From NCBI GenBank assembly GCA_051294905.1, contig CM119376.1:17360001-17424000 (forward strand): DNA of 64,000 nucleotides, in the 5' to 3' direction. Shown here in pieces: positions 1 through 61,516 of the stretch. Under the pieces are notes generated by a model. The model saw only the letters and a program-made list of their open reading frames with translations. It made no database searches and was not told the DNA's origin. The position numbers were made by a program, and so were the translations under genes. Within the stretch, counting starts at the first letter, position 1. Each line of letters starts with the position of its first letter. The stretch comes from Botryllus schlosseri (Eukaryota).

Positions 1-3000
1 GAATCATTGCGGGCCACTGTGGATTTCATTTCCACTGTCAATTCACCAGATGCATCTAACAGTTCTGAGGAAGACAAACGAGACCTGACCGGTAATCATG
101 GAAATCCATGTAACACGAGAGAGACTGATGGATCTTCGTCTGATAATAGCTCTTCCAGAAGGACTTCTTTCGACAGTGAACTCAAAATTGTTTGCAGACG
201 GATTAGATCGTGTTGCAATGATAAAGGGCTGAAATGAAGAAAAATCTCTACGAAACAGGGCAACATTTTCAAGCATTAGGAGAGCTGTATGTTACCATGG
301 CAATGAACGAAGTCTGCTCGACGACGGATCAAAAACTGCATTTTATCCGGGCAGCTGTGCTTTTCAATGCGGCGATCGTTAGATTTGGAATTGCAGATAG
401 TTCCTGCGACCAAGTTACGGCTACTGAAAAGCTGCAGTGCTTATTCAAGCAAATTTACGGGATAATCGGGTCGAGTGAAACCGATCAGACACTAATAGAG
501 TTTTGCCAGGAACTGAAGCACGAACTGGGAAACATCAGAAGACACGAAAGAGAAATTCTGAACCGCGTTAAGAGACTACGATGTTCAGGGGCTTCGAAAT
601 TGGACTCTAATGGCAAAGGACAAGTTACCTTCATTAGAGAGCTGACCGAAGAAAATTCGACAAATTATCGACGTATCATGGTGAAAGTTTTGGGGAAATG
701 CATAGACGTTATGGGAGACCCCCCATGTGACTTCGAAATTGTTGGTCTCGGTTCGTTAGCGAGGGGGGAAGTGACCATGTCTTCAGATTTTGAACATGCA
801 ATAATTTTAGATGACAAGGTTTTGATCGCCAAGGAGATTCGAGAATATTTCAGATGGCTCACAGTTCTTTCTTGTATCATCGTAATCGGATTAAGAGAGA
901 CAATCGTTACCAGTGTTGATATCAAGTATCTGTGCGATCCCGACGCTCTAGACAAAAGTGAATGCTGGTTCAAGGATGAGTATACGCCTTGCGGATTATC
1001 GTTGGATGGTATCATGTCACACGCCTGCAAGTGCCCTATCGGGAAGGTGAGATTAACCAAAAATAGGAAGCACAAGGTTGAACTCATACAGACCGCACGC
1101 GATATGGCGACATACATGACAATTAGCGAACAGCTGAAAATGGATATGTACTGGATGACATCCTCGGCACCACTTGTTTCGTATATGGCAATATGACTGT
1201 CTATGATGCGTTTCGTGCACAATGTCACAAAATCAACCTATCACAGACTGGTGCAGTTCTTTATAAGCAGCAACGTGACTTGCTTCGACACGTTATTCTC
1301 TTGGAAAGTAGTGAAGGCAATATTCATGTGAAAAAGGCGATATATCGACCCATATCAGTTCTCTTACACATAATTGCGAATATCTTCAAGTCGTACTTCA
1401 GCAGCAGCTTTTCCATCCTTGATGATCTGTTGCACAAAGGCGTTATTGACATCGAAACATACGCTGAATTGTCACGCGCGGTCGGCGTAGCTTTGGAGAT
1501 TCGCATGCGTTGCTCTCAGACGAGGCATTGTCGAAAGAATGTCATCAAATGCAAAGATCTGAAAGACTTGATCGGAGCTAAACACGCTGCATATCTCCAA
1601 GAAGCCCCCCGTTTGCTCATTAGTACAGTTAACGATCTGTTGCACAGAAAGTTCATATTGGAAGAAAAGCGTGATGCATTACACTTCACATACCGAACCT
1701 GTGATATTTGGTATAAAGTGAATTATGCGTGTGAGATCGCATTGCGTATAAACGACGAGAGTCTCATTTTCGACGTACTGGTAAAGATAACCGAACTTCT
1801 AGAACAATACCGGACAAACAAAATAGACTCAACTACAGCTTATCGATGTTTAACAATGCAAATCAGTGCGTTGTTTATCTGCTTGTCAAATTGGCTTTTG
1901 AGCACCGTCAATTCCCCGTGTGTCCTTGATTCCATGTCCGTAGGCGTCATGAGAGACCCAGTAGACTGGTGCTGCAATGTGCTATCTAAGTTCGAACCTT
2001 GCATTTCAATTTTACTGTGCAGAGTAGGTAGCCTGTATTCGCATCAACGATATGACGAAGCAAACAAATATCTTGACGAATGCATAGCGATGAGTTTGAC
2101 GAAGCAAAAAGTTCCCGATTCAGATCTGGATTCTATAGCAGAATGGGAAGTCGCAGTGAAGATGAAGAGCTTATCATCGCGCGAAGCGCAGAAATACTTC
2201 AGTGCAGCATTTTCTAAATCGCGCAATTCAACAAAGTTCGTGCAGGCAATGCATCATATCGGCAAGTTAGAGGCGGAAATGTTATGTGAAAGAAATAAAT
2301 CTGAAGATATTCCTTCTTTAATGCGAACGATCATGAACAAGATTCAACTAAATAGTGGCATTTTCCAACCTAGCCAAGTCCGAAAACTATTGAGCCATAT
2401 AGCTCGTATTATGCTTTCAATTCAAGGTGGCACCAGCGTTGCAAACGCTAAGCAGCAGCCAATTATCAGTCGAGATACAAAAAAACCGACAACTCCGAGT
2501 AAAATACATGTAAAGATTACTGGACGCCAAAGTCACACCGCAGAACACTACAAATATTCCTTCGGAATTCAACGGAATATCGGCAAACATTCCAACTTTA
2601 CCTTCACAAAATCACGATACGCGGGGCCATTGATTGTGCAAGAAGTCATTGTGAATTATTATCATGCGTGGCAAATATTCTCTGCGGAAAGTTACGACGA
2701 CATGGTGATGCTTATTGAATATAGCATGAATGAATTACTTACTTGTCCAAAATTGCGCCCACTGGAATGCACGCGATCCATGATAAAACACACCAAATGC
2801 ATAGCCTTGTTGGCTTTGTGTGAAAATATCAGAGCTTCTGATCACTGCTTATTTGAAAAACTGTGCGACTCCGCACCTATTGAAATCAAGAAGACGGTAT
2901 TATTCCAGTCATTCATTTATCCTTGTTTGAAACAACTTTCATCGCGATTGTTGATCAAACGAACGATGGTTACGAAACAAAATGAAGTGTGTAAAGGAAT

Positions 3001-3538
3001 ATTCTGCAATTCAAGCTTTCTCGTGGGGAATTAATTCAGAGCTGCTGTGTTGGATTTCGTCAATTTCAGATTCAACGAAAGCATCAAACTCGTATGGAGA
3101 ATACTTCATCGTGGTGACTGTACCGGTAGAAACTTACAGACGAAGTTTTTTCTCATGTGCCTACTCGCGATCATGATCGAAAGAAAACGGGAATGTCCCC
3201 TTCCACATTTACGAAAATGCAGGGAATTCGCCGCCAAACACGCCTATTTGTGGGACACGCAAGGAAATATCGATAAGGCCAAACTTTTCAGGGAGAATCA
3301 GATTGTGTCGAGATTCTACTACCGACAAAATAGTGCGCTCGCTGCGGTGTATAATCTGGCCGTGGATGCTTCCTTTTTCGATTGGAGAGGTTCTGCGGCA
3401 CTTAGTTGGAAACTTCTACATACTGGGAAAGTGAGAAATGCATTGCTGGACCACTGCTCGCTCTTATTACTTCACGTGGCGGAGGTAGCGTACGGCGAAG
3501 CTATCAAATATCAGTTAATGCTTAATGCATCAACATAA
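1..3538 (+). pseudogene. Disrupted, divergent paralogue (copy A) of the DUF294-like nucleotidyltransferase gene; 5' end runs off the window
   Basis: ORFs 7-237, 234-1196, 1193-3034 and 3047-3538 align collinearly with the 1215-aa ORF at 13351. One base is missing in each of two A-runs (232-234 and 1137-1140), and an in-frame TAA at 3032-3034 sits where copy B has TCA. The motif GLGSLARGEVTMSSDFEHAIILDD is intact. Confidence 0.85.
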
Positions 3539-5520
3539 CATGGATGCATAAAACACAAAAAGGTCTGTTGCTCAGTATATTGTCCTCGTTTCAATATACA
3601 TGGCATAATCAGTGAATATCGTATATCGCGCAAGAACTTCAAATGATTTCGATCACAACACCACGTAATACAAAGGAATTGTTGCAATAGAATATGACAG
3701 TGGCTCTCAAACCAGCGCCTTGGTGTTGCCAGTTGTTTCATTTTCCATCGTTCTCCTGTCTTTCCTATTGGAAATGCAAACGCATCAGATCAAGCTAATG
3801 CAGTGGTTCTTGACTGGTGTTCCCGGGAACGCCAAGGGTTTCCCGAGCCAGTGTTAAGGGTGCCTTGCGGGAAGTCAAGACTCACACTCAACGCATCGGA
3901 GAGAGAACACACTAATTTGCAATAATAAATAGATATAAATACTCTGTTGATGCATTTTGTGCACCTTAGTGCGGTAGCTGTTTGTTTTTATGAAATGAAA
4001 TTTGGGGCTACCGCGGGCTTTCAGATTAGCGTAAGTTCTCCCCGGGCTAAGAACCACCGCCCTAATAAGCTAATAAGAGTACGAAGTTGACGTGGCGACT
4101 TCATCTTTTGCCAGATTTACATCAGCTTGGCGGTGTTATAGCATTACATAAATGCATATCGTTTTTATTTGACTTTATGCAGCACCGAAAGAAACGGTAT
4201 TCAATGCCAGAGTGATATACTTGACTTTTTATAGTAGTTGAATCGAATATGTGGCGTGTAGCACTGAACAATGAACAGACATTGTCGCGAAACCGCGAAT
4301 TCATTTTTATAAAAGTACGCTTGGACATTGTACAGTGTTACCACTGAAATGCACGTTACAATGACGTGAAAAATTGAATATATATAATTGAAATATCGGA
4401 AATATGGATTCGATAGTTGTGAAGCTGCAGATTATATGATCATAAGCTGAAAAATATGTGGTACTAGATTCATCTTAATAGATCGTACCATCGATATGAT
4501 CCGAAAGCTGTATGCCAATTGCCGATTATTAGGCTGGCTTATAATCCATGATGGTGTTCATGAAATTTTACGGTGGTGAGTCTGATGAGACGGGGTAAAA
4601 TCGCCTTACCCAGATAAACGTGCTATGGCTGAGAGTCGATTAAAGTCTCGCGCCTATGACCGTGGACAAGCCGACTACGCCTACTAGATTGGAATACTAT
4701 TCCTCATTTCGACAATATCGAGAAAAGAGGCGTTTCGGAGTCGGACAAAGCACCTTGTGCTACCGTGCCCATTTCCCACTACCACCCGACGTACTATGAA
4801 CACAATGCGCTGCACGAAAACACCTGGCAACAGCGACAAGGGGGCGCGGGAGAAGAAAAGGTTAAGAACCTCTGTTGTATAGGCCTAATATGTTGAATAG
4901 TTATATAATCCTACCTTTTCTCATTTGATCCTGACATGATTTACGATGACGAAAGTGCTGCGCAATACCTTTGCTTGCTATAATATATCCTATACTTGAT
5001 ACTAAAGCAAACTTAATCTGGCTTTATGACAGAAGTCACAGAACCTCACTCGGACCAAAATCAAACACCGACCATGTAGACGGAGAAGGCATTTTACCAT
5101 TCTATATAACTTTCGTAGTTTTGTGGATTGCTTACCGTGATGACAATGTCATATAGCAATGTGACGTAATTTCATTTCCGAGGATTGCCTTAAACTAGTT
5201 TCCTACGTCGTTGCCCAACAATAAAAATCGTCGAGGGGATTTTGAAAATCGGGTAACCACAACTGATTTCTCGCTTGAGTTATTACTGATTTGGTTGTGT
5301 TTCGAATGTCATGGTCGCTTGCAACCCCAGACATAATCTGGCCTATTACCTGATCTTTTAGGAAAGCACATATCGAATTCGAGCTTTTGTTTCACACTAT
5401 ACCGCCACGGCGCCACTCGTCTATTGTACTCAGCTGTGCGTTTCCTACCCAATCTGGGCACGATGGGCGATGACGCCGCAATATCTGTACCATGGTTAAG
5501 TGGAACTTGGCCAGTACAAT

Positions 5521-6142
5521 TACGCAATCAAACGTCCGGTCATACAGTAATCGGCTACAGCGTATCGCCCTCCATTTTTATACAGTTCTACCTACACTAG
5601 GGGTATTCAAAAATGACCTCTTTCTCAAATCATACTGGCCAATTGATAAAATTGTTAGTTTACCTAATTTAAGCCTACACACCAAATTTGGTTCAATTCC
5701 AATTTACGGTGACTGATTCTTTAATTATTTATTATAGTTGTGCTCACCGTAAATACTATTTTATTCAAATCAAAATTTTTCGACGACAATAACTCCGCTT
5801 CCACTGGTTGGAATTGAACCAAATTTGGTGAACATCGTTCCTGTAGACAACGTAACACATTTATGGGGTGAACAGAAATCTTCCATTTTTTTATTATTTA
5901 TTTTTATACAACAAATCGAAACTTTCTTCTCCTGTAGCAATCCGGCTACTGGCTGGAGTCGAACCAAATTTGGTGTGCAGGCTTAAATTAGGGAACCTAA
6001 CAATTTTATCAAGTAGCTGGTATGATTTGAGAAAAAAGTCATTTTTGATTACCCCCAGTGTAGGTAGGACTTTATAAAAATGGAGGGCGATACGCTGAGA
6101 CGCTGTAGCCGATTACTGTATGACCGGGTGTTTGATTGCGTA
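5521..6142. repeat. ~620-bp imperfect palindrome (foldback) inside a dispersed repeat
   Basis: Left arm TACGCAATCAAACGTCCGGTCATACAGTAATCGGCTACAGCG... is mirrored by ...CGCTGTAGCCGATTACTGTATGACCGGGTGTTTGATTGCGTA; the inverted similarity extends >150 bp inward. Confidence 0.8.
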
Positions 6143-6853
6143 CACTCATAGAGCGGCTAGAAAGAGGAAGTTCTTGAGTGGCGTTTCTCCTACTATTGAT
6201 CCGTGTCACTTCTGCTTTTTGCTGCTTGACTGCCTGCGTGTTGCGTGACTGTTCTGTGTTACAATCGTTCGAGACAGCTTACAGTTATGGCAAATTGACA
6301 GGTGATGTACCGGTAATATGTATCGCGGAACCGCTTCAAGACATTCGTTTGTGGCTTATATGTATATATTTTTTGTGACCGGGAAATACGGTATTCAGTT
6401 ATTTAGAAACTATTTGATTGAGCAGGGATAAGAAGGAAACACAGCTTGTCACTGTTTCCGATTTTCTGGAGAATGAGAAGCATTCAGTATTACAACGTGT
6501 CTCGAGACATATCAAATACAAACTCTTTATTCGACTCAACATTGGCGTAATTATCGTGCCTGGAAGAGTAGTGAAGTGTCAGCAAAATGTTGTTACGCTT
6601 AGTTAGAAAAGTTTAGCGGTGACAGGCAGAATATCGCAGTAGTCGATTGCGATTACATGCAAAAGTAAAATCGGATATAAATATATAATATATTCTTCGT
6701 TAGTCACGGTGCAATGACCACCAACATAGCTAATAGGCTACTTGTAATGATCAGTGCAATTTACAAATCCGACTGTTCTATGTTCACATATGTTTAATAC
6801 GTCTTAGTGTAACGTTGAGTCATAGTCTTATTAGAAATAATCAATTAGATATA

Positions 6854-8036
6854 CAGAGGTGATCAAAGTAGTCAAGAATGCTACTCAAGTAGAAGTAGAA
6901 GTAACAAAGAAAAAATCTACTCAAGTACGAGTAGAAGTAGCCATTTTAAAAGCAGCCTAAAACTACTTGAAGTGGAAGTAGAATTGACTGACTTTAAATC
7001 TACTCAAGTAAGTAAGTAGTTGTGAAAACTATCGAAATTCGTACGCATAAACTGCCAAAAGCTGCAAATTGAGCTATGCAAAAGGTGCAGAGCTCGATTC
7101 ATATTGATGCATCCCAGAAGGTATAAATTGTCGACAGCATAAGCATTCGTCCGCATCATGGGATGAAAATGATAGCGTTGATATAGGGATGCCATACTAA
7201 TCCTCTGTTTACTCGAACGCCCCGATTGAGAAAATATCATGATATTGCGTCCTCCTCCATATTATAAGGACCGTAGTTTGGTCGAAGTGCAATATGGATA
7301 AGTTGTGTCGGATGCGGTGTTAACACTTTGCGCGATTAGTAAACGTTAATAAAAAATATGGCTGATCGTAAAGATGCCATATAGTGTGACTTTCTTTTCG
7401 GATATTAGAGGCATTGCTACACTTTCTTTTATACTTCAACATGTATGGTCTCCAGATAAAGGAACTAAAACTAATTAGAACTCAAAGTCTGATACTGAGA
7501 ATTGAAAGAGAAATATAAATACTACTTCGAAAAAGCCGAAAATATATTTCATGACTTTTGTATATATTACGATATGACAGGTAAATGCTAGATTGCGAAA
7601 CGGTAGTTGCAAACGCTATGATGGACCATATACTAACTGCAATAACATATGTTATATGGGCGACAATGCGGTGTGAACGGAACCACGCAAACCGCTCCCT
7701 AAATGATATTCACCGATACGTTCCAAGAAATCATATTAGTCTCTGTGCGCGAAGTGCGACAAAAATTCTGAGCTTTACTCAACTTTTATGAAAATTAAAT
7801 GTATAATGCTACGTGAAAACATCCTCGAAATTCCTCTTTCTGATTGCTGGATTACACTACTTCTACTTGATAAACTGAAAATAGCAAAACGTAAGTAATA
7901 AGTAGATCACAAAATATTACGAAGTATAAGTAGAAATAGCGGGAAATTAGATCTACTTGAGTAAGTACCAAAGTAGCGGAAAACTACTCGAGAGTATTTC
8001 AAAAAAGTAGAAGTACTTCGTTACTGATCACCTCTG
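6854..8036. mobile_element. Non-autonomous DNA transposon with CAGAGGTGATCA terminal inverted repeats (TIRs) and AGTAGA-rich subterminal repeats
   Basis: CAGAGGTGATCA...TGATCACCTCTG ends; related copies at 22186-25001 (inverted) and ~63158-63415. No clean TSD. Confidence 0.7.
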
Positions 8037-8618
8037 GATATGCACAATAATAATTATAATCGAATTCATATACGGTCACTTTGATTTTTCTGGAATGAAA
8101 TCGATTGCGGTTAAAAGTATTTGAGAAGATTGTAATGGTAATCCATTTTAGAACCATTTTAGAGTCGATTTTTCCATCAAAAGAATTCAAAAATCAAATA
8201 TTTAAAAAAAGTTAGTGGTATTCTGCGTTTTAACCTTATATGGCACGCGGGTCTCTGAAACACGCTATGATAGTGGTTATCAAACTTTTCTAGACACGCC
8301 CCCCCCCCTTTGCCCCTTATCGTGATATCACAAAATATTAAAGAGAGAAATCAGAATGCTGGCAATCCCAACGGATAGTTTGATGGCATTGAAGGTTATG
8401 GCTATTGATGAGAGAATTCTCAAATATGAAATTCTGACAATAGACAAGAGTAAACACCATGAACCCGATTTCAAAAGATTCCATGCCAAATTAGCACACC
8501 AAAATTTGCCTGTGCCAAACTGATCTCGGTACTATTAACTTGTGATCAAGCCAAAATAGTGGCTCTCAACACTTTCGAGTTATCGGCCTCTGTTCCGGTC
8601 AATATAACGAGGTGGTAG

Positions 8619-8790
8619 GCAGTGTTTGGATGACTCGAGTCATGACTTGACTCGAGTCAAGACTCTTGTAACATTTTTCACATGACTTGACTTGACTCGA
8701 GTCACTTGATTGGTCTCGACTTTTCAGAAATGTGGATTGACTTGTGACTCAGAGCAAAATTTGCAAGTCAATCTCAAGTCAACAAGTAAT
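8619..8790. mobile_element. Fragment of the GACTCGAGTC-repeat hAT family
   Basis: Clustered GACTCGAGTC/GACTTGACTC motifs, as in the ends of the elements at 52878 and 55834. Confidence 0.6.
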
Positions 8791-10008
8791 GATATCGAAA
8801 AAAATCGCCGTATCTTAAACATGTTCGGGTTGTTCTCAAAAGGCTGGTGTGACTTGCGAGTGCGAGGGCGACCAATCTTCATTCATTCATTCGATGATTG
8901 TGCGTTTTACTGCACTGCCATTGTTTTATCACAAATAAATTGACCACAAACGAAGTGATCGGAGCTTATAGCTTACGTTGACGTTGACTAGTATAGCATC
9001 GCCGTAACATCACTTCCTCAGGCCTCTACCCAAAACGTTGGCCTTGGGCCCCCACAGGGTGATAAGCCAAACTTCGGTCAATAATATCGGGAATTGCATA
9101 TATATATTGCTATAAATTTTTTCATCCCCTCTTTTCCCGCGTAATCAGATTTACCGGTATAGAGCTGACTGAGGAGTTGTCTTGGAAAATGTGGGGCCCG
9201 TAAATAATAATTAAACATATTCGGGAGGTTCCGTTGGTATAATGACATCGTTATATATGTTATTTCGTGACCTCCTATCTGCTATGCCAAAAGATATTGA
9301 AATCACCCAAACGTACAAAACTAAAAGACGCATACGATTTCAAATTGGTATTTTTTCACCGGAAAAATCTTTTCCTCTGCGGAATTGCATTTGTCTTCTG
9401 GGGTTCAGATTGCCAGGACAGGAACATTCTGCGCCAGCCATTTAGGCACCTATGGACATTTAAGCATAGGCTATATTAGTAGTGTATACATCGAAGTTCT
9501 CGGTAAAAATATGGACAGTCCTCTTCGGCCAAGATTTTCTCGCTGGCGATCGTTCTGGCACACTTCTCGGAGTCGCCCATATAACACGACCTAAAACTTC
9601 ATATGTCTTGGTGCGACGTAGCGATGTATAATGTCCGCCGACGAAATTCCCATTTCTATAAATCATAAGTATTTTTGCTTAGGGAACATTAAATCGGGGT
9701 TTGGGGCGCGGCAGCAGTTACGGTTCTGACTAGTAGTAAAGTAATCTACTTGCAAAGAGTCTATCTCTGTAGTTACCACACGCATTATGGTAGAAATAAT
9801 TAAAATCTGTTGTAGTAAAACGAAAGATACTTTCCTACGTTCTTGGATAGATAGTGTATGTCCAATTGTCCATACTAAGTAGCTTGCCAAGAATGGAGGG
9901 AGAACATTCAACAGCAGCAGTTGTCGGCTTGCAACACTGAAGTTGTGCGTACACTGCTGGTGAGTGGTGACACACAGTGTTGTTTCATTCAGACAATGTT
10001 GTCTACAC

Positions 10009-11192
10009 CAGTGCTCTTCAACCGGGGTTGTCGTACACCCTAGGGTGTACCAGAATTTGCAAAGGGTGTACCACTCGGATGGGGTGTACAGGGGTGTACC
10101 AGATCCGAATTACAATGAGCCGATGGCTAGCCATCACAAAGGCAGGTTTATGGGTCAGTACCGGTTGTGATGTCATAAGTAAATATTTCTCCTATTCATT
10201 TAGCCGTCGGAAATAGATCAATGTTTCCGTTTGGTGTTGGAAAGTATGCTGTGAACAAACATGTGCTCAGCTAGTCATTTGTCTTTTAGTGATTATTGAG
10301 GAAACCGCCGCGATAGCTCAGACTTCTTGGATCGGTACTTCCTACCCGACGTTCATAAATACCGCAATGCACATAAATGAAGTGACGTAGCCAGCCAGGG
10401 TCGAAACAGCTTCGATGTTGAAATCGAAACCCTTTTGTTTTAAAATGCCAATTTTATGTCCAATATTTCGCCATATATTTGCAATTTAGTATTTTGTTAT
10501 TAGTGATTCAAATTAGCGACAATAGACTGTGTATAGCGGCATACGATCTTAGGTTACTGACATCTCTTTCAGCCCATGTGCTACTATCGACTGTGTGTGG
10601 TGTGGGGCAGGCCTGTTACGCAGTAGGCTGGTGCGCCTGCTATCATCGCTGATCTGAATTACCGCTTCTGTAGCAGTAGCTTTACATACTCTCTCCCCAG
10701 TACTGTTACATTTAGGTTGATTATCGTTCGTAATGTCATGCTGTTTTTGGGCTGACACGAAATAAATTCCAATTTGCGTGGCGGGTGGCCTAACTGGCTG
10801 CGAATAGACAAATATTATTTTATTCAAATCCAAATTTTTTACGGCAATAATTCCGCTTCTACTGGTTGGAATTGGACCAAATTTGAAAAACATCGTTTTT
10901 ACAGACAACCTAATACTTTCATGGGGTGAACAGAAAAATTTCAAATTTTTCGTTATTTATTTTTTACATAATAAATAGAAAATTTCTTCTCCCGTAGCAA
11001 TGCGGCTACTAGTTGAAATTGAACTAAATTTAGTGTGTTGGCTTAAGCTAGGTAACCTAACAGTTTTATCAAGCAACCAGTACGATTTGAGAAAAAAAAG
11101 TCATTTTTGAAGACCCCTAATGAACAGGGGTGTACGAGTTTTGAGCAAACGTTAAACGGGTGTACCACGTCGAAAAAGGTTGAAGAGCACTG
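10009..11192. mobile_element. Non-autonomous hAT element
   Basis: TIR CAGTGCTCTTCAACC...GGTTGAAGAGCACTG; perfect 8-bp TSD GTCTACAC (10001-10008, 11193-11200); GGTGTAC subterminal repeats. Confidence 0.9.
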
Positions 11193-12699: not shown

Positions 12700-13212
12700 T
12701 TGGTTTTAAACAAATGCCCTTTTGAGAAAAAAAAATTGTTTTTTTTCTTTCAAACGTTGTCTAATTATGCCATAATTGTGTAAGTACGTCCGAAAACCCA
12801 TGTAGTATGAGCCTACGGACGATTTACACCAAGAATAGTCGACGTATACGATGTGGGGTGGCTGGAACCCTCGAAATCGTCGTCGGCTCAACAGATTTTG
12901 AATGTAGGTATAGGTCATTGGTGCGGAATGGGTGTTCTGATGATGATGACCGCCAACCGTAAAAATGCTGCATAATGATGTAGTTCTGGTTAAAGATATT
13001 TTTGGTCTCTTTATGACAGTGGTCGGAAGCCCTTTTCGTCGAAGGAGCCATATTTACCCTATATTTTCAATTGTCGATGTCAATCCACTTTGACGTCACA
13101 ATTAAATATTCGTGACATCATGGCGAAAAAGAATTGAAAAACATGTTTTAGACAAGGGTCTTGTTTTAAAGACGTTTTTTTTAAATCGATTTTTGTTTTA
13201 AATGCAACCCTA
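12700..13212. mobile_element. Partial copy of the TAGGGTTGCA-TIR MITE family, just upstream of NTase copy B
   Basis: Ends in AATGCAACCCTA; interior matches 21110-21549, ~19276-19630 and ~37058-37570. Confidence 0.7.
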
Positions 13213-13350
13213 ATTCAACTGCTGAAGCTTGTCATTTTCGCAACGCACAGACCCTCATAAGACTACAAGCACCAAAGGAATTGACATTTCTAAGAGTGAT
13301 CTTGTTTTCAGAATAATACATATTTCTATCAGAAGCCCTGACAATTTACC

Positions 13351-16300
13351 ATGTCGTTCTTCCAAAGAATAAAAGAGAGATATGAGGATATTCGCAGATG
13401 CGATAAACTTTTCGATGATTTAATGGAACACCGTGCTTTACTGATTCGTGGTAAAGACATCGAATCGATAATGAAGTCTATGAATATCTCAGAGGAGTAC
13501 ATCTCCGCTGTGAAATCGTCCGAAGCATTTCAAAGATATATGGATGAGAGGCCAATCCTGAACTCAAGCGATCAACAGAACACTCAATTTTTGTCCGATA
13601 GTTGTTTAGTTGACAGAACGTGTCTCGACGATAAGTTAAAGAATATTTGTGAACAGATTCGATATCATTGTGACAATTATGGAAGAGAAATAAAGAAAAA
13701 CCTGTACGAAACGGGGAGACAATTTCAGAGATTGGGGCAGTTGCACATCACCATGGCAACGACCGAAGTACGCTCGGCCATGAATCAAAAATTGGATTTC
13801 ATCAGGGCGGCAGTGCTTTTGAATGCAGCGATTGTTAGGTTTGAGATCGTTGGCAAATGTTACGATAAAATGAAAGCAACAGAAAACTTCCACGATTTAC
13901 TTAAAAAGATTTATGAGCTGATAAAATTCAAAGGTGACGACTGTAACATGATTCAATTCTGCCACGAAATGAAGCAGGAGATTCTAAAGTTAAGAGCTTC
14001 GGAACAGGCGAGTTTGGGTCGTGTGAAGAAATTGCGATGTGCAAACGATCAAGATTTTGAATCAACGGGAAAATCTGAATGCTCCGAGATTAAGAAAATA
14101 ACCGAAAATAATTCGAAAAATTATCGACGCATCATGGTAAAAATTTTAGAAAGATGCCGGGAAATTATGGGGAAGCCCCCCTGTGAATTCGCCATTGCTG
14201 GTCTCGGTTCATTAGCTAGAGATGAAGTAACGCTGTCGTCAGATTTCGAACATGTAATTATTTTGGATGACAAGGTGGTCGTTGCGGAGGATATCCGAGA
14301 GTACTTCAGATGGTTCTCCATTCTCTCATGCCTTGTTGTCATCGGATTAGGAGAAACAATCGTTCCTAATGTTGATATCAGATATCTTTGTGATCATTAC
14401 TCCTCGTACGAAAGTGAGAAATGGTTTAGAGACGAGTACACTCCATGCGGATTATCATTTGATGGAATGATGCCGCACGCATGCAAAACTCCTATAGGAA
14501 GACAGAGACCAACCAAAAATAAAAATAATGCTGTTGAACTCATCCAGACCGCATCTAACATGGCGAAATACATGACATCAAGCGAACAATTGAAAAATGG
14601 ATACATGCTGCACGACGTCCTTGGTACCACCTGCTACGTTTATGGTAATGAAGATGTCTATGATTGTTTTCTTGCACAATGCCAAAATAACAAACAAACC
14701 ATGCACGGAGACATTCTACGCGAGCAGCAATATGACCTGCTTAGATTTGGTAAAAGTGCGGAATTTCATAGAAGTTATTATATTGATGTCAAAAAGAAGT
14801 ACTATCGACCAATAACTGTCCTTCTACACGTTCTTGCAAATCACTTCCATTTAACCCAACAGAACAGCTTTAGTATTCTCGATGACTTGAAGCGTCAAAA
14901 TGTTATTGACGCAAGCATATATGATGAATTATCGCATGCAGTGGCAATAGCTTTGGATATTCGCATGCGTTTCTATCAGACTAGAAACGGACAACGGAAT
15001 AACATCGAACTCAAGGATCTGAGCAGAATAATGGGAACGAAACGTATGGTACATCTTGAGATCGCCACCTATTTTCTTGAAATTGGAGTCAAAGATCTAA
15101 TGTACAGGTCGCACGTATCGAGAGAAGATTGTATGAATTTGCGTTTCCCCAGAAGAGATTCTGACATTCGATACGACGAGCGTTGTATTTACGAGAAGTC
15201 ATATCGCGAAGACCACGGATCTTTGATTTTTGATATCCTTGGAGAAATAAAGAATCTTTTACATCAATACGAGACTAAGAAAATACTCCCGGCGACGGCT
15301 TGCCAATTCATAACCGTACAAATCGTGGTGCTACATGACTGCTCAATAGCACTGGATAGAGGCGCCAACCCGTTTCCGAATTTACGTGATTTCACCCCAA
15401 ATTTAGAGCCTATTGTGAACGACCTCTTTGAATGGTCATATGAGATACTTTGCAAGTTCGAAGCAGGCATCCAATATTTCATTAGTAAGATAGATATCCT
15501 ATATAGACACGGGCAATACCACGCGGCAAACAAATATCTTAACCAATGTGTGCTGGAGCTGTGTTGTGATAAACAGAAATGTTCAGATCATTATTTAGAT
15601 TTAGTAGCAGGATGGGAATTTGAATTAAAGTTGGTGATCCTTTCACCGAGGGAAGCAGTAGAGTATTTTGCAGCAGCTGCATCTGAACGACGCAACCTAA
15701 CTGATTTCACACAAACATTGTATCTCATTGGTATGATAAAGGCTAAAATATTATGCGGGCCGAAGATATACGACCCGATATGTCAAGTTTCAACTTTGAA
15801 AGGTATTGGACGGCAAGTCAATTCACTCACACATCGTCTTAATCCACTCCAATATTGGAAGATATTGTCGACTATCTGCATTATTTTGATTGATAGCAAT
15901 CGAGGTTTCGATTCTTTGGAATTCTTCCGATCGATCGTCAATATGGCGGACAAACGGCGGGCAAACGATAGTAAACCTTTGAATGATTTTGGGAAGAGTA
16001 TCAACTCGTCAGCACATTATAAATATGACTATGGCATAATTCGGAATACCGGAAGACATGCCAATTTCACTTTCGCAAAATACGAGTACACAAGGCCTCT
16101 GGTTATGAAGGAAGTGGAGGTCAAATATCATCACGCGTTGCAGATATTCTCGTCGGCATCGTACAGCGATATGCTGATGCTGATTGAATATATCATGGAT
16201 ACAGATCTCGGTTACAAGGAAGTGCCAAGCGAATACGTGGACATGACGGTTAAAACTACCGAGGGTATTGCGGTTATGACAATGTGCGAAAATATCAGAG

Positions 16301-16998
16301 TTAGTGACTACAGTGTTTTAATAAAACTGTTCAACTCCACCTCAGCTGGTACGATGAAGAGTATTCTACTCCAGCCATTCATTTACGCTTGTCTCAAGGA
16401 TTTCTTCGCAAGTTCGTTAATAAATCGAACACTGATTATAAAGCAAAAAGCCATATGCGAAAGTATTTTTCTCTGTTCAAGTTTTGCCGTTAATGATTCA
16501 TTTAAAGCTGCTGTATCAGATTACACAAATTTTGAATTTCGCGAAAGTGCCAAAAAGGTTTGGAAGATGCTTCAACGTGTCAATTGCGCTTGTAGTGAGA
16601 CGAAGACAAAGTTTTTTCTCATGTGCGTGCTAACCATCATGATTGAAAGAAAACGAAAGCGGCCCTTTCCTCATTTGCGAAAGTGTAGGGAATTATCTCT
16701 CGTACAGGCTTCTCTGTGGCATCTGTCAACTCATAAAGCCCCGGGTAATCATTACAAGATGTTGCCAGGGGTGTCACGACTCTACGAACAGGGAAATGAT
16801 TTTCTCGTGGCAGTATACAATCTTGCAGTGGACGCATCCGTTTTTGAGTTTAGAAGCTGCTGTGTATTGAGTTGGCAGCTGATCCATACACGAAAATTAC
16901 GGCATCGATTGCTACGGCGTTGCATGCTGTTGTTATTATATACAGTGGAGGTAGCGTACGGCGAAGCCCGCGAATATAGTTACGTACATAGATCATAA
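13351..16998 (+). CDS. Intact intronless 1215-aa protein (copy B): helical N-terminus, DUF294/GlnD-like nucleotidyltransferase, DUF294_C-like helical domain, long helical C-terminus
   Basis: Uninterrupted ATG-to-TAA ORF. Motif IAGLGSLARDEVTLSSDFEHVIILDD (14200-14270) fits the Pol-beta hG[GS]x9-13Dh[DE]h signature. DVKKKYYRPITVLLHVLA...LDDL...I...ELSHAVAIALDIRMRFY (14785-14976) resembles DUF294_C. Two paralogues are in the window. Confidence 0.9.
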   Translation: MSFFQRIKERYEDIRRCDKLFDDLMEHRALLIRGKDIESIMKSMNISEEYISAVKSSEAFQRYMDERPILNSSDQQNTQFLSDSCLVDRTCLDDKLKNICEQIRYHCDNYGREIKKNLYETGRQFQRLGQLHITMATTEVRSAMNQKLDFIRAAVLLNAAIVRFEIVGKCYDKMKATENFHDLLKKIYELIKFKGDDCNMIQFCHEMKQEILKLRASEQASLGRVKKLRCANDQDFESTGKSECSEIKKITENNSKNYRRIMVKILERCREIMGKPPCEFAIAGLGSLARDEVTLSSDFEHVIILDDKVVVAEDIREYFRWFSILSCLVVIGLGETIVPNVDIRYLCDHYSSYESEKWFRDEYTPCGLSFDGMMPHACKTPIGRQRPTKNKNNAVELIQTASNMAKYMTSSEQLKNGYMLHDVLGTTCYVYGNEDVYDCFLAQCQNNKQTMHGDILREQQYDLLRFGKSAEFHRSYYIDVKKKYYRPITVLLHVLANHFHLTQQNSFSILDDLKRQNVIDASIYDELSHAVAIALDIRMRFYQTRNGQRNNIELKDLSRIMGTKRMVHLEIATYFLEIGVKDLMYRSHVSREDCMNLRFPRRDSDIRYDERCIYEKSYREDHGSLIFDILGEIKNLLHQYETKKILPATACQFITVQIVVLHDCSIALDRGANPFPNLRDFTPNLEPIVNDLFEWSYEILCKFEAGIQYFISKIDILYRHGQYHAANKYLNQCVLELCCDKQKCSDHYLDLVAGWEFELKLVILSPREAVEYFAAAASERRNLTDFTQTLYLIGMIKAKILCGPKIYDPICQVSTLKGIGRQVNSLTHRLNPLQYWKILSTICIILIDSNRGFDSLEFFRSIVNMADKRRANDSKPLNDFGKSINSSAHYKYDYGIIRNTGRHANFTFAKYEYTRPLVMKEVEVKYHHALQIFSSASYSDMLMLIEYIMDTDLGYKEVPSEYVDMTVKTTEGIAVMTMCENIRVSDYSVLIKLFNSTSAGTMKSILLQPFIYACLKDFFASSLINRTLIIKQKAICESIFLCSSFAVNDSFKAAVSDYTNFEFRESAKKVWKMLQRVNCACSETKTKFFLMCVLTIMIERKRKRPFPHLRKCRELSLVQASLWHLSTHKAPGNHYKMLPGVSRLYEQGNDFLVAVYNLAVDASVFEFRSCCVLSWQLIHTRKLRHRLLRRCMLLLLYTVEVAYGEAREYSYVHRS

Positions 16999-18231: not shown

Positions 18232-18234
18232 TGT

Positions 18235-22155: not shown

Positions 22156-22423
22156 AAATTTCGTCTGGATTTCGTGAAATCTACACAGAGGTGGTCAGTA
22201 ACGAAGTACTTCTACTTTTTCGAAGTACTCAAGTAGTTTTCCTCTACTTCTGGTACTTACTCAAGTAGATCTTTTTTTCGCTACTTTTACTTCTACTTCA
22301 TAATATTTTGTGAATTACTTACTTACTTTTCGCTATTTTCAGTTTGTCAAGTAGAAGTAGTTTAATCTCCCAATAACAAAAATAGCCTAAGGCATTTCGG
22401 GGCTGTTTTCACGTAGTACCAAC

Positions 22424-34790: not shown

Positions 34791-34794
34791 AACG

Positions 34795-57453: not shown

Positions 57454-57865
57454 ATGTAAACATGCCAAGTATGACCGGACCATGCTAAAGTGTCGCTTGG
57501 TTTAAATGCCGTTTGCTATTGTGACGTGTGCTCAACTCTCAGACAATCTATATATCAGACTATCTGCGAAACCCAAAACAAAACTGGGCCTTGCGCTTGC
57601 CATAAGTCAGTAATGTTGGATTCAGTAGAAAACGTATGTCCTATGTTCCATAACTATGACTCTCAAACTCCGCAAACCTAAACATAATAATTCAGTGATG
57701 GATATCCAAGAGGGAAATCAACAAAAGTTATATGCGATTTCCCCATCACGAATCAGCAAAAGCAAATATAACAAATATTACATAAAATTCTGAAATTTAT
57801 ATAAGTGTAATTATTTTCAGAAAATAATTCTTATAATTTTTCATCGGTAACTCCAAAAACTAACC

Positions 57866-60800
57866 ATGTCTCTGATACGAAGAATAAGGGACATCTATGA
57901 GGATATTCGCAGATGCGATAAACTTTTCGACAATTTAATGGAACACCGTGCTTTACTGATTCGTGGTAAAGACATCGAGTCGATAATGAAGTCTATGAAT
58001 ATCTCAGATGAGTACATCTCCGCCGTGAAATCGTCTGAATCATTTAAAAAATATATGGATGAGAAGTCAACCCTGAACTCAAGCGATCAACACAACAGTC
58101 CATTTCTTTCCGATAATTATTTGTCCGATAGAACGTTTTGCGATGGCGTGTTAAAGAGTATTTGTGAACAGATTAGATCTCACTGTGACAAATATGGAAG
58201 AGAAATAAATACAAACCTGTACGAAACAGGGAGACAATTTCAGAGATTGGGGCAGTTGCACATCGCCATGGCAACGACCGAAGGACGCTTTGCCATGAAT
58301 CAAAAATTGCATTTCATCAGGGCGGCTGTGCTTTTGAATGCAGCGATTGTTAGGTTTGAAATCGTTGGCAAATATTACGATAAAAGGAAAGCAACAAAAA
58401 ACTTTAACGACTTGTTTTAAAAAATATATGAGCTGGACGAATTCAAAGGTGACGACTGTAACATGGTTCGATTCTGCCAAGAAATAAAGCAGGAGATCCT
58501 AAAGCTAAGAGATTCGGAAAAGGTGAGCTTAGGTCGGCTGAAGAGATTGCGATGTGCTAAGGATCGAGACTATGAATTAACGGGAAAATCCGAATGTGAT
58601 GAGACTAGGAAAATAACCGAGTATAATTCGGAAAGTTATAAACGCATCATGGTCAAAATTTTAAAAAGGTGCGTGGAAATTATGGGGGAGCCGCCTTGCG
58701 ACTTCGCTATTGCTGGTCTCGGTTCAATTGCCAGGGATGAAGTGACGCTGTCCTCAGATTTCGAGCACCTAATCATTCTGGATGACAGAGCAAACGTTGT
58801 GGAGAGTATGCGAGAGTACTTTAGATGGATCTCCGTTCTCTCCTGCCTCGTTGTCATCGGCTTAGGAGAAACAATCGTTCCTAATGTTGATATCAAATAT
58901 CTATGTGACCATTACTCATCCGACGAAAATGAAAAATGGTTCAGAGACGAGTACACTCCATGCGGATTATCATTTGATGGGATGATGCCACACGCGTGCA
59001 AAACTCCTATTGGCAGACAGAAACCTACCAAAAATAAAAATAATGCGGTTGAACTCATCCAGACCGCATCTGATATGGCGAAATACATGACATCAAGCGA
59101 ACAATTAAAAAATGGATACATGCTGCACGACGTCCTTGGTACCACCTGCTACGTTTATGGTAATGTAGATGTATATCATTGTTTTCTTGCGCAATGCCAA
59201 AATAACAAACAAACCCTGCACGGAGACATCCTACGCGATCAGCAATATGACCTGCTTAGAAATGGTAAAAGTGCGGTATTTTTTGGAAATTATTATGTTG
59301 ATGTCAAAAAGAAGCTCTATCGCCCAATAACTGTTCTTTTACGCGTTCTTGCAAATCACTTCAATTTACCCCACCAGAGCAGCTTTAGTATTCTCGATGA
59401 CTTGAAGCGTGAACGTATTGTTGAAGCGATGATCTATGATGAATTGTCGCATGCAGTAGCAATGGCTTTGGAGATTCGCATGCGTTTTTATCAGACTAGA
59501 AACGGGCAAAGGAATCTCATCGAACTCAAGGACCTGAACAGCGTGATGGGCACGAAACGCATGGTACATCTTGAGGTCGCCACCCATTTTCTCAGAATTG
59601 CAGTTAGAGATCTAATATATAGGACGCACGTATCGAAGGAAGATTGTAAGAAATTGCGCTTTCCTACAAGAAATTCTGACATCCGATACGGTGTGCGTTG
59701 TACATACGAGAAGTCATATCGCGAGGACCACGAAACTTTGCTCTTTGATAGTCTTGGAGAAATAAAGAATATTTTACAACAATACGAGACCATGAAAATA
59801 CTCCCAGCCACCGCATACCAATTCATTACCGCGCAAATCATGGCGCTGCATGACTGCTCATGCTCAATAGTATTGCAGATATGCGGTAACCCGTTTCCGA
59901 ACTTTCGTGAATTCACCCCAAATTTACCTGCTATTGTGAACGATCTCTGCGAATGGTCATGTGAAATACTTTGCAAATTCGAACCCGGCCCGCGATATTT
60001 CAATAATATGATAGGTATCCTGTTTAGGCGCGAGCAATACAACAAGGCAAACATGTATCTTATTCTTGACCATTGTGTGTTGGAACTGATTTTGAATAAA
60101 CAAAAATGTCCAGATCCTTATTTAGATGCAGTAGCAGGATGTGAATTTGAATTGAAATTGGCGATTCTTTCACCGAAGGAAGCGGTGGAATATTTCGAAG
60201 CAGCTGCATCCGGGCGACCCAACCTAACTTGTTACACAAAAACATTGTATGTCCTTGGTATGGTAAAGGCTCAAATATTATGTGGACCGAAGGAACACGA
60301 CCCGATATGTCAACTGTTATTTTTGAAAGTGATTGGGTGGCATGTCAATTCAAACACTCACCGTCTTAAGCCACTCCAATACCGGAAGATAGTGTCATGT
60401 ATCTGCAAAATTTTGATTGATAACTATGGAGGTGACCATGCTTTGGAATTCTACCGATCGATCATCAATATGGCGGACAAACGGACGGCAAACGATAGTA
60501 AACCGATGAATGATGTTGGGACGAGTGTCAATTCATCAGCACATTATAAATACGACTATGGCATGATTCGGAATACCGGAAAACATGCAGATTTCACTTT
60601 CGTAAAATCCGATTACACAAGGCCTCTGGTTATGAAGGAAGTAGAGGTGAAATTCCATCACGCGTTGCAGATACTCTCGTCAGTATCGTACGGTGATATG
60701 TTGATGTTGATTGAATATAGCATGAAGAAAACTCTTCGTTACAAAGCAGTGCCAGGCAAATACGTGGGTATGATGGTAAAATTTACTGAGGGTATAGTGC

Positions 60801-61516
60801 TTATGGCATTGTGCGAAAATATCAGAGCGAGTGATCACAGTTTATTTATAAAACTGCTCGACTCCACATCAGATGATACAAAGAAGGCTATTTTACTCCA
60901 GCCATTCATTTTCGCTTGTCTCAAGGAATTCTCTGCGCGGTCGTTGATAAATCGACCGATTATAGCGGAGCAGAAAGATACGTGCAGACGCATTTTTCTA
61001 TGTACTTCTTTCGTTGACGATTCATTCAAAGCTTCTGTATCAGATTACACAAATTTTAAATTTCGTGAAAGTGCCAAAAATGCTTGGAAGATGCTTCAGT
61101 ATGTCAATTGCGCTTACAATGAGGTAAAGACAAAGTTCTTTCTCGTGTGCGTACTAACCATCATGGTCGAAAGAAAACGGGAGCAGCCACTCCATCATTT
61201 GCGGAAATGCAAGGAATTATCTCGCGTACACGGCTCTCTGTGGGAGAAGTCGACCCAAAAAGCCCCTCTTTTCGAGACGTTGCTAGGGTCGTCAAGATTT
61301 TACGTTCTGGGAAATAGTACTTACGAGGCGGTGTACAATCTGGCTGTAGATGTATCTGTTTTCGATTTTAGAAAATGTTGTGCATTGGTTTGGAAGCTGA
61401 TCCATACCCGAAAATTGAGACATAATTTGCTGCAGCGTTGTGTGCTGTTGTTAATAGATACAGCCGACACCGCCTACGGTGACTCTCGCAATCACGGTTT
61501 CGAATATAGACTGTAA
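57866..61516 (+). pseudogene. Copy C of the DUF294-like nucleotidyltransferase gene; one in-frame TAA (pseudogene, polymorphic allele or base error)
   Basis: ORFs 57866-58420 and 58463-61516 are in the same frame. TAA at 58418-58420 replaces AAA (Lys) of copy B at a T4/A6 junction. Otherwise collinear with B, with the motif GLGSIARDEVTLSSDFE intact. Confidence 0.85.

What the first reader, a model, noticed from the sequence alone, without database searches (positions are those of the whole stretch)
1..61516. Locally expanded family of giant intronless, bacterial-type (DUF294/GlnD-like) nucleotidyltransferases in an animal genome
Seen: three co-oriented ~3.6-kb paralogues with no coding introns, although neighbouring genes are spliced. 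B and C are close; A is divergent. The NTase core is the most conserved part, while linkers and the C-terminal half vary. Known: DUF294/GlnD/GlnE-type NTases are mainly bacterial protein-modifying enzymes, and other Pol-beta NTases (cGAS/CD-NTase, OAS) make immune second messengers. Inference: a horizontally acquired or retroposed NTase family undergoing birth-and-death evolution, the pattern typical of immune, effector or allorecognition loci. This is the best candidate for a poorly described system in the window.
Basis: partly seen in the sequence, partly recalled or inferred. Interest (0 to 1): 0.82.

Follow-up and report, generated by a model that had tools for sequence, protein, structure and literature searches.

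The report
Tandem GlnE-like nucleotidyltransferase genes in a tunicate
A sea-squirt chromosome carries one intact and two broken copies of a giant one-exon enzyme gene of the bacterial GlnE/DrrA type. The same uncharacterised family occurs in other sea squirts, is hugely expanded in amphioxus, and has its nearest non-animal relatives in intracellular bacteria.

Summary
Three co-oriented ~3.6-kb paralogues exist, but only copy B (13351-16998, 1215 aa) is intact. Copy C (57866-61516) has one in-frame TAA. Copy A (off the left edge to 3538) has at least 2 frameshifts and 2 stops.

All three carry DUF294, and B and C also DUF294_C, with an intact G-S-x10-D-x-E motif plus a third Asp. The N-half model matches GlnE adenylyltransferase domains and Legionella DrrA. 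The C-half is a degenerate TPR-like helical solenoid plus a helical end domain. Among 1.84 billion representatives, only one other protein shares that C-half.

The genome holds about 17 loci in small tandem clusters, nine of them intact single ORFs. This is neither a contaminant nor a recent transfer. Styela and Clavelina have relatives, and amphioxus has 877 hits at E<=1e-5.

The closest non-animal relatives are giant DUF294-TPR paralogues in a Holosporaceae endosymbiont. The published Neochlamydia NEX2 family has the same domain pair. The direction of transfer is unresolved (AU p = 0.19).

The core is under purifying selection (omega 0.16). No RNA read covered B in four bulk runs. The most likely function is a regulated protein AMP/UMP-transferase. 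An immune role is untested. Earlier notes on this window agree on the catalytic site.

The parts
1..3538 (+). Copy A, a pseudogene. It begins about 122 nt left of the window. It has frame changes near 231-273 and 1136-1139, a TAA at 3032-3034 and a further stop in the N-terminal part. The G-S-x10-D-x-E motif is retained.
13302..13311 (+). Pyrimidine-tract/AG acceptor-like site 39 nt upstream of the ATG of B, conserved in C. Inferred 3' splice or spliced-leader trans-splice acceptor. Homology between B and C starts about here.
   Evidence: inference, no reads support it
13351..16998 (+). Copy B, an intact single-ORF gene of 1215 aa: N-helical region + DUF294 NTase + DUF294_C + TPR-like solenoid + C-terminal helical domain.
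13351..14070 (+). B residues 1-240, helical N-terminal region. Residues from about 75-90 onward are conserved in the whole family and align with bacterial DUF294 models.
14083..14610 (+). B residues 245-420, Pol-beta-type NTase core (Pfam DUF294 match at 245-322). Omega against C is 0.16.
14200..14250 (+). Catalytic motif G-L-G-S-x10-D-F-E (residues 284-300). G286, S287, D298 and E300 are invariant in 32 family members.
14461..14463 (+). Asp371, the invariant third acidic residue, in the F-D-G motif.
14776..15027 (+). B residues 476-559, DUF294_C helical substrate-binding domain.
15148..15951 (+). B residues 600-867, TPR-like alpha-solenoid. This is the least conserved part, with the highest local omega (0.6-0.8 in two pairs).
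16003..16074 (+). B residues 885-908, a Tyr-rich motif conserved in all long forms (N-x-S-x-H-Y-K-Y ... G-R-x-A-N-F-T-F). It lies in a loop modelled at low confidence.
16099..16995 (+). B residues 917-1215, helical C-terminal domain specific to the long forms.
57811..57820 (+). Acceptor-like site upstream of C, homologous to the one upstream of B.
57866..61516 (+). Copy C, full length and in the same frame throughout, with one premature TAA. The catalytic motif is intact at 58715-58765. Either a young pseudogene or a segregating null allele.
58418..58420 (+). TAA nonsense codon (codon 185) of copy C. B has Lys at this position.

Best explanation
The window holds a small tandem cluster of a chordate-invertebrate gene family. 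There is one intact gene (B) and two decayed paralogues (A, C).

The encoded protein has five parts: a helical N-region, a GlnE/DrrA-type Pol-beta nucleotidyltransferase domain (DUF294), its helical substrate-binding domain (DUF294_C), a degenerate TPR-like solenoid, and a lineage-restricted helical C-terminal domain.

The family has about 17 loci in this tunicate genome. It is shared with other ascidians and massively expanded in amphioxus. Its nearest non-animal relatives are expanded DUF294-TPR families of obligate intracellular bacteria. The tie to bacteria is therefore old, predating the split of stolidobranch from aplousobranch ascidians, and its direction is unknown. Since then the family has evolved by local duplication and pseudogenisation.

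Inferred mechanism: the NTase transfers a nucleoside monophosphate (most likely AMP or UMP) from an NTP onto a protein hydroxyl group, as GlnE, GlnD and DrrA do. The C-terminal solenoid would select the target or sense a ligand that gates the enzyme.

Shown: domain identity, intact catalytic residues, purifying selection, family distribution and gene decay. Inferred: substrate, regulation and biological role.
For: - Domains. Pfam DUF294 and DUF294_C score above their gathering cut-offs.
- Catalytic residues. G286, S287, D298, E300 and D371 are invariant across 32 family members. The motif is present in all nine intact long forms.
- Fold of the N-half. The model has pLDDT 83.7. Its only significant PDB matches are GlnE adenylyltransferase domains (3k7d, 1v4a) and DrrA (6yx5_B, TM 0.64 by target), at E 3e-7 to 3e-6. 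Weak SidM_N Pfam hits occur in C and in relatives.
- Fold of the C-half. The model is an all-alpha solenoid with weak TPR-type matches only: Foldseek E >= 3e-3 against PDB and 2.8e-4 at best against AFDB clusters; VIA-align Z up to 10. TPR Pfam hits occur in 3 of 11 paralogue C-halves.
- Selection. Omega is 0.16 in the core and 0.26-0.37 overall in three recent pairs.
- Copy number. About 17 loci, nine of them intact ORFs of 1137-1300 aa.
- Other animals. Styela, Clavelina and Branchiostoma have homologues at E 1e-66 to 1e-114. Amphioxus gives 877 hits at E<=1e-5.
- Gene structure. The coding region is one exon in Styela. In amphioxus P0356, residues 86-897 (NTase plus TPR) lie in one exon.
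- Bacteria. Holosporaceae 'Namur' has at least 10 giant paralogues. None of 300 other sampled alphaproteobacteria reaches E<=1e-8. Neochlamydia NEX2 combines F-box, DUF294 and TPR (PMC4209131).
Against: - No RNA-seq read covered the B ORF in about 5.9 Gb sampled from four bulk runs of the same species. Expression of B is therefore unproven.
- No biochemical datum exists for any DUF294 protein in the papers searched.
- A Pol-beta fold does not fix the acceptor. Small-molecule or nucleic-acid acceptors are possible.
- The acidic pair is D-x-E here, not D-x-D as in DrrA.
- The TPR assignment of the C-half rests on weak scores within the noise range for helical repeats. A profile comparison with a TPR-bearing relative found nothing.
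Confidence: 0.6

Rival explanations
1. The proteins are nucleotide second-messenger synthases (like cGAS, CD-NTase or OAS). The solenoid senses a pathogen ligand and the NTase makes a diffusible signal.
For: - They share the Pol-beta NTase superfamily and a complete catalytic triad.
- An effector domain fused to a repeat array, in lineage-specific expansions, is the usual layout of invertebrate immune sensors. Structural neighbours of the C-half include ART-TPR, CHAT-TPR and MalT-like TPR proteins.
Against: - No Mab21, OAS or SMODS match was found by Pfam or among the Foldseek matches listed.
- The significant fold matches are GlnE and DrrA, which modify proteins.
- DUF294_C belongs to the helical substrate-binding class found with GlnE, GlnD and kanamycin NTases (PMC3710099).
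Confidence: 0.15
2. The family arose in eukaryotes, and the intracellular bacteria (Holosporaceae, possibly Neochlamydia) took it from a host. On this view the animal genes are not horizontally acquired from bacteria at all.
For: - With canonical alphaproteobacterial DUF294 as outgroup, the Holosporaceae paralogues sit next to amphioxus inside the chordate assemblage (97/100).
- Only 1 of 301 sampled alphaproteobacteria has the family.
- Amoeba symbionts are known for eukaryote-like repeat and F-box proteins (PMC4209131).
Against: - The AU test does not reject animal monophyly (p = 0.19).
- The outgroup branch is very long, so long-branch attraction is a risk.
- The DUF294 plus DUF294_C module is overwhelmingly bacterial.
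- The core lies in one exon in tunicates and in amphioxus, which fits a bacterial source.
Confidence: 0.3
3. The local copies, or the whole tunicate family, spread by retroposition of a processed mRNA, which would explain the lack of introns.
For: - Single-ORF coding regions are found in every tunicate copy examined.
- Strong B/C homology covers little more than the ORF, from about 70 nt upstream to 30 nt downstream.
- Copies are dispersed over 7 contigs.
Against: - There is no poly(A) tract after B or C.
- A residual homologous patch lies about 250 nt downstream.
- Homology starts at a conserved acceptor-like site, which a processed copy would lack.
- A, B and C are co-oriented neighbours forming one clade, as expected from tandem DNA duplication.
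- The amphioxus core is also a single exon, so intron-poverty predates the tunicate copies.
Confidence: 0.1
4. The locus is decaying. B is an unexpressed relic whose ORF has not yet been hit, so the window holds no working gene.
For: - Two of the three local copies are broken.
- No reads fell on B in four RNA runs.
- Runs guessed to be RNA hold only 8-14% of B's words.
Against: - A 1215-codon open frame at dS 0.38 from C, with omega 0.16 in the catalytic core, is not neutral.
- All catalytic residues are kept.
- A paralogue on C9 is held at 30-38% of words by three runs guessed to be RNA.
- Expression may be conditional.
Confidence: 0.15
5. The contig is a contaminant or chimera, or the genes are a very recent bacterial insertion.
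For: The domain family is mostly bacterial.
Against: - The window lies inside a 31.5-Mb contig with even GC of 0.35-0.43 and interspersed repeats shared across the window.
- Paralogues lie on 7 contigs.
- DNA runs from 5 studies of the species hold the sequence.
- Orthologous clades exist in other ascidians.
Confidence: 0.02

Closest known systems
GlnE (glutamine synthetase adenylyltransferase) AT domains, PDB 3k7d and 1v4a
   Same: Best structural match of the N-half model (E 3e-7 to 3e-6). Same layout: helical lead-in, Pol-beta NTase core with a G-S...D-x-[DE] motif, and a helical substrate-binding domain.
   Different: GlnE has two tandem AT domains and acts on glutamine synthetase under PII control. 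Here there is one NTase, no GlnE-specific Pfam domain, and a 600-residue solenoid tail. Sequence identity is 12-14%.
Legionella DrrA/SidM AMPylation domain, PDB 6yx5
   Same: Fold match with TM 0.64 by target. Weak SidM_N Pfam hits in copy C and in relatives. The family's nearest non-animal relatives also come from intracellular bacteria.
   Different: DrrA is a secreted effector with GEF and P4M domains and a G-x11-D-x-D motif. The tunicate proteins have D-x-E, no GEF or P4M domain, and are host-encoded.
Neochlamydia NEX2 family (F-box, with or without OTU, + DUF294 + C-terminal TPRs; 50 members; PMC4209131), and the giant DUF294-TPR paralogues of Holosporaceae bacterium 'Namur'
   Same: Same pairing of DUF294 with a C-terminal repeat array, and the same mode of evolution (large within-genome expansions). 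The Holosporaceae protein is 39% identical to B over the core and shares family-specific motifs.
   Different: No F-box or OTU domain in the tunicate proteins. Canonical TPR_12 repeats in the bacterial proteins and in most animal relatives are replaced in the long forms by a degenerate solenoid plus a new C-terminal domain. NEX2 sequences themselves were not compared here.
Amphioxus and ascidian NTase-TPR proteins, known only as automatic models ('Protein-PII uridylyltransferase N-terminal domain-containing protein', 'TTC28', 'uncharacterized protein LOC...')
   Same: True family members, with 30-38% identity over residues about 75-570 and E down to 1e-114. The core lies in one exon.
   Different: They carry canonical TPR arrays, and several amphioxus models have 2-3 NTase modules. 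The long-form C-half of this genome matches only one other protein (P0001) among 1.84 billion representatives.
Canonical bacterial DUF294 proteins (cNMP-binding + CBS + DUF294 + DUF294_C) and GlnD
   Same: The same two Pfam domains. The language-model neighbours of the module are bacterial DUF294/DUF294_C clusters.
   Different: No cNMP-binding, CBS, HD or ACT domain. The canonical proteins are very distant: a long branch separates them, and none of 300 other alphaproteobacteria reaches E<=1e-8 with the family profile.
cGAS, OAS and CD-NTase immune nucleotidyltransferases
   Same: Pol-beta superfamily. An analogy in being fused or coupled to sensor modules.
   Different: No sequence or fold match beyond the superfamily core. 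Those enzymes make free nucleotide signals, which is not indicated here.

Membership tests
Pfam DUF294 (PF03445), Pol-beta NTase clan | HMM score above the gathering cut-off (21 bits) | tested here: met
   B 36.9, C 36.5, A 32.6 bits
Pol-beta nucleotidyltransferase superfamily | h-G-[GS]-x9-13-D-h-[DE]-h motif plus a third acidic residue | tested here: met
   G-L-G-S-x10-D-F-E at residues 284-300 and D371 in B and C. These residues are invariant in 32 relatives. A keeps both motifs in altered form.
Pfam DUF294_C (PF10335), KNTase_C clan | HMM score above the gathering cut-off (22.5 bits) | tested here: met
   B 30.6 and C 26.7 bits. A scores 19.7 bits, below the cut-off.
Canonical bacterial DUF294 sensors | N-terminal cNMP-binding and CBS domains | tested here: not met
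   No such Pfam hit at E<=1. The N-region is a helical bundle.
GlnD (PII uridylyltransferase) | GlnD_UR_UTase, HD and ACT domains | tested here: not met
   None found. The database name 'PII uridylyltransferase N-terminal domain' on amphioxus relatives reflects the NTase domain only.
GlnE (GS adenylyltransferase) | Two tandem AT domains with GlnE-specific regions. Fold of an AT domain. | tested here: inconclusive
   The fold of one AT domain is matched (3k7d, 1v4a). There is only one NTase per protein and no GlnE Pfam domain. It is fold-class-like, not an orthologue.
DrrA/SidM-type AMPylase | ATase fold with G-x11-D-x-D, and demonstrated AMP transfer to a protein Tyr | tested here: inconclusive
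   The fold matches (6yx5_B). The motif is D-x-E, not D-x-D. Activity is not testable with these tools.
cGAS, OAS, CD-NTase | Mab21, OAS or SMODS domain | tested here: not met
   Absent from the Pfam hits and from the PDB and AFDB matches listed.
NEX2-like DUF294-TPR effectors (Neochlamydia) | N-terminal F-box (with or without OTU), central DUF294, C-terminal TPRs | tested here: not met
   DUF294 is present. No F-box or OTU. The C-half is only TPR-like. The architecture is similar, but membership is not shown.
Chordate NTase-repeat family (unnamed) | Strong similarity over the N-helical region, NTase and DUF294_C, plus placement inside the tunicate clade | tested here: met
   E 1e-83 (Styela) to 1e-114 (Branchiostoma). 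The rows labelled tunicate (named ascidians plus unnamed ENA contigs grouped with them) form a clade with 100/100 support.

The most novel reading that the evidence does not exclude
Non-vertebrate chordates possess a class of host-encoded GlnE/DrrA-type protein AMPylases (or UMPylases) that has not been studied. The class would be exchanged in deep time with the effector arsenals of intracellular bacteria and expanded as repeat-guided sensors or effectors of innate immunity or self/non-self conflict.

In this tunicate's long forms, the TPR array was replaced by a new C-terminal module. Its conserved Tyr-rich loop (B residues 885-908) could act as a built-in pseudo-substrate or self-modification switch for the NTase.
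Probability: 0.15. Interest if true: 0.8.

Novelty: new variant of a known kind. Interest (0 to 1): 0.55.

Why it matters
- A 2025 review names only FICD and SelO as eukaryotic AMPylases, and treats the GlnE/DrrA-type adenylyltransferase fold only in bacterial enzymes and effectors (PMC12409994). A conserved, catalytically intact, multi-copy GlnE/DrrA-type family in tunicates and amphioxus would add a third enzyme class to animal nucleotidylylation.
- Its expansion pattern (hundreds of copies in amphioxus, tandem clusters with pseudogenes here) is the pattern seen in invertebrate immune repertoires.
- The family offers a concrete case for studying gene exchange between animals and intracellular bacteria.
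- The full-text library searched holds no paper on the animal family.
- The window itself adds modestly: one intact gene, two dead ones, and no expression evidence.

Tried and rejected
- Complex prediction (collected). The NTase half (residues 90-600) was folded with the C-terminal part (residues 854-1215), ATP and Mg, to ask whether the Tyr-rich loop docks on the active site. No verdict: score 0.00, partner pLDDT 28. This is evidence neither way.
- Profile comparison of the C-half with the TPR-bearing relative P0015. No meaningful alignment (probability 2.5%).
- Sliding-window dN/dS in three recent pairs. No window exceeded 1. The highest values, 0.6-0.8, fell in the solenoid.
- Sigma-70 promoter and terminator scan upstream of B. 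Counts were as in shuffled sequence, and the scan is irrelevant for a eukaryote.
- Literature. Nothing on animal DUF294. The DUF294 hits in the fitness-screen preprint were DUF2946.
- Naming the unnamed ENA and JGI hits. No names exist. Their context is gene-sparse with transposase genes, so they are eukaryotic, not bacterial.
- DNA of the only other long form, P0001. Not retrievable.
- Pfam on ten other ORFs of the window. Only weak sub-threshold hits.
- Contamination or chimera, and recent HGT. Rejected on contig size, composition and paralogue distribution.
- Retroposition of the local copies. Rejected on flank anatomy.


Full report
**What is in the window**

The window is G000:C6:17360001-17424000 of a 495.5-Mb genome in 219 contigs. 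The contig is 31.5 Mb long. GC is even at 0.35-0.43.

Only four ORFs exceed 250 aa, all on the + strand, and they belong to three homologous units.

- **Copy B** (13351-16998) is one uninterrupted ORF of 1215 codons.
- **Copy C** (57866-61516) is collinear and in one frame, but codon 185 is TAA (58418-58420) where B has Lys.
- **Copy A** begins about 122 nt before the window and ends at 3538.
  - It changes frame near 231-273 and again at about 1136-1139, where one A is missing from an A-run.
  - It has a TAA at 3032-3034 and a further stop in its N-terminal part.

So the cluster is one gene and two pseudogenes.

- B and C are 74% identical in protein and 82.7% in DNA.
- A is 43-60% identical to B, with dS above 1.3.
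- On trees, A, (B, C) is a clade with 100/99 support, so the three arose by local duplication.

**Domain identity**

- Pfam places DUF294 (PF03445) above its cut-off in A, B and C, and DUF294_C (PF10335) above its cut-off in B and C. No cNMP-binding, CBS, HD, ACT, F-box or Mab21 domain is found.
- The Pol-beta signature G-L-G-S-x10-D-F-E (residues 284-300) and a third acid (D371 in an F-D-G motif) are present in B and C. They are invariant in an alignment of 32 relatives.
- An AlphaFold model of residues 1-620 has pLDDT 83.7 and pTM 0.80. It has only four significant PDB matches: both adenylyltransferase domains of E. coli GlnE (3k7d, 1v4a) and the AMPylation domain of Legionella DrrA (6yx5_B).
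- The model of residues 600-1215 has pLDDT 69.8 and is entirely helical.
  - The first part resembles TPR arrays, but only at scores typical of helical repeats.
  - Three of eleven paralogue C-halves give weak TPR Pfam hits.
  - A low-confidence loop carries the best conserved motif of the C-half, a Tyr-rich stretch at B residues 885-908.
  - It is followed by a helical domain of about 300 residues with several invariant positions.

**Family size and mode of evolution in this genome**

Searches with B and with a family profile find about 17 loci on 7 contigs.

| Class | Loci |
|---|---|
| Intact long forms, 1137-1300 aa | nine: C2 x2 in tandem, C9 x3 clustered plus one apart, C15 x2, and B |
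| Mid forms, 820 and 940 aa | two |
| Short forms, 728-744 aa | three |
| Divergent locus | one |
| Broken | A, C and the C11 locus |

- Every intact long form is a single ORF and keeps the catalytic motif.
- Recent pairs have omega 0.26-0.37.
- In B against C the NTase core has omega 0.16, and the C-terminal half 0.37-0.48.
- No 80-codon window exceeds 1.
- Tandem clusters, lineage-specific clades and pseudogenes fit birth-and-death evolution under purifying selection. Positive selection is not shown.

**Flanks of B and C**

- Strong B/C homology runs only from about 70 nt upstream of the ATG to about 30 nt past the stop.
- It starts at a conserved pyrimidine-tract/AG site (13302-13311 and 57811-57820). 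Several paralogues have similar sites 14-35 nt upstream of their ATG.
- This suggests a 5'-UTR intron or spliced-leader trans-splicing. It is inference; no reads support it.
- There is no poly(A) tract downstream, and a weak homologous patch remains about 250 nt downstream.
- This argues for DNA-level tandem duplication, not retroposition.

**Expression**

- Four bulk RNA-seq runs of the same species, about 5.9 Gb sampled, gave no read on the B ORF.
- Only partial, repeat-like reads fell at 12700-13300.
- Index searches found no holder on record as RNA. Runs guessed to be RNA hold 8-14% of B's words, and 30-38% of the words of a C9 paralogue.
- B is therefore silent or conditional. This is the main weakness of any functional claim.

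**Distribution**

- An exhaustive phmmer search of 1.84 billion representatives gave 1231 hits at E<=1e-3 and 360 at E<=1e-30.
- Only one hit, P0001 (an unnamed Logan contig), matches the long form end to end. All others match residues about 75-570 only.
- Named hits are Styela clava, Clavelina lepadiformis and Branchiostoma lanceolatum, B. belcheri and B. floridae hybrids.
- A search from an amphioxus member returned 877 proteins at E<=1e-5. The top 120 were all from Branchiostoma. Most carry long TPR arrays and bear automatic names such as 'Protein-PII uridylyltransferase N-terminal domain-containing protein' or 'TTC28'.
- Many unnamed ENA and JGI hits lie on gene-sparse contigs with transposase genes, so they are eukaryotic DNA. 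The two examined are again single ORFs.
- In Styela the coding region is one exon, and two copies sit in tandem.
- In amphioxus P0356, residues 86-897 (NTase plus TPR) are one exon, preceded by small 5' exons.

**Relation to bacteria**

- The NTase module resembles bacterial DUF294/DUF294_C clusters. After amphioxus, its structural neighbours are bacterial proteins, including a 1210-aa TPR protein.
- A pattern scan of one genome per bacterial and archaeal species found one locus, in Holosporaceae bacterium 'Namur'.
  - It is a 1295-aa DUF294 + TPR_12 protein, 39% identical to B over the core. It shares family-specific motifs.
  - That 1.9-Mb genome has at least 10 giant paralogues.
  - None of 300 other evenly sampled alphaproteobacteria reaches E<=1e-8 with the family profile.
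- The literature describes a similar architecture in Neochlamydia. The NEX2 family has 50 members combining F-box (with or without OTU), DUF294 and TPRs (PMC4209131).
- In trees, tunicates, amphioxus and Holosporaceae are each monophyletic.
- With canonical alphaproteobacterial DUF294 as a very distant outgroup, Holosporaceae groups with amphioxus (97/100). However, holding the animals together costs only 5.5 log-likelihood units (AU p = 0.19).
- An old link with intracellular bacteria is therefore well supported. Its direction and date are not.

**Mechanism**

- Shown: a complete Pol-beta active site, a GlnE/DrrA-class fold with its helical substrate-binding domain, and constraint on the core.
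- Inferred from GlnE, GlnD and DrrA: transfer of AMP or UMP to a protein hydroxyl group, with the solenoid choosing a target or sensing a ligand.
- A nucleotide-signal synthase is the main functional rival. It finds no support in sequence or fold matches.
- An attempt to see whether the Tyr-rich loop docks on the active site gave no verdict.

**Known or new**

- The full-text library holds 22 papers mentioning DUF294. None concerns animals.
- A 2025 review names only FICD and SelO as eukaryotic AMPylases, and discusses the GlnE/DrrA-type fold only for bacterial enzymes and effectors (PMC12409994).
- The family exists in databases as unnamed automatic models, so it is catalogued but not studied.
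- Within it, the long form of this genome, with its lineage-restricted C-half, is a new variant.

**Verdict**

- It overstates recent horizontal acquisition and retroposition.
- The immune role is untested.

Noticed in passing
window 12680-13213; also 19292-19638, 21139-21550, 37094-37572: An interspersed repeat just upstream of B with several copies in the window (73-84% identity). All RNA-seq reads that touched the B region lay here. All were only partly aligned at 95-99% identity, so they come from other copies of a transcribed repeat.
   Followed up: partly
window 25145-25519 (-): A 124-aa ORF with a weak, sub-threshold match to the PKAT KLD domain (E 5.9e-4, 20.5 bits against a cut-off of 27.7).
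   Followed up: no
window 26989-27339 (-): An exon-sized ORF with weak ubiquitin-like-fold hits (YukD, Get5_N, UN_NPL4).
   Followed up: partly
window 45887-46554: A 333-bp direct tandem duplication at 99% identity (45887-46219 against 46222-46554).
   Followed up: no
window 4880-12200 against 20300-36200: Many dispersed repeat pairs (64-87% identity) between the A-B spacer and the B-C spacer. The intergenic DNA is largely repeat-derived.
   Followed up: no
L017-L029 (Holosporaceae bacterium 'Namur', 1.9-Mb genome): At least 10 giant ORFs (about 1200-2170 aa) with the same G-L-G-S...S-D-x-E NTase motif as the animal family. They form three deep subclades: an expanded putative effector family in an endosymbiont.
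   Followed up: partly
P0184, P0185, P0186, P0196 (Branchiostoma): Amphioxus gene models of 1560-3112 aa contain two or three NTase modules each. They may be true multi-module proteins or fused models of tandem genes.
   Followed up: no
window 16003-16074 (B residues 885-908) and the same place in all long forms: The best conserved motif of the C-terminal half is Tyr-rich and sits in a loop modelled at pLDDT below 50. It could be a pseudo-substrate or self-modification site. This is unexplained.
   Followed up: partly
P0162, P0174 (unnamed ENA proteins of 628-632 aa): Two relatives carry PF03710 as well as DUF294, according to precomputed Pfam hits.
   Followed up: no
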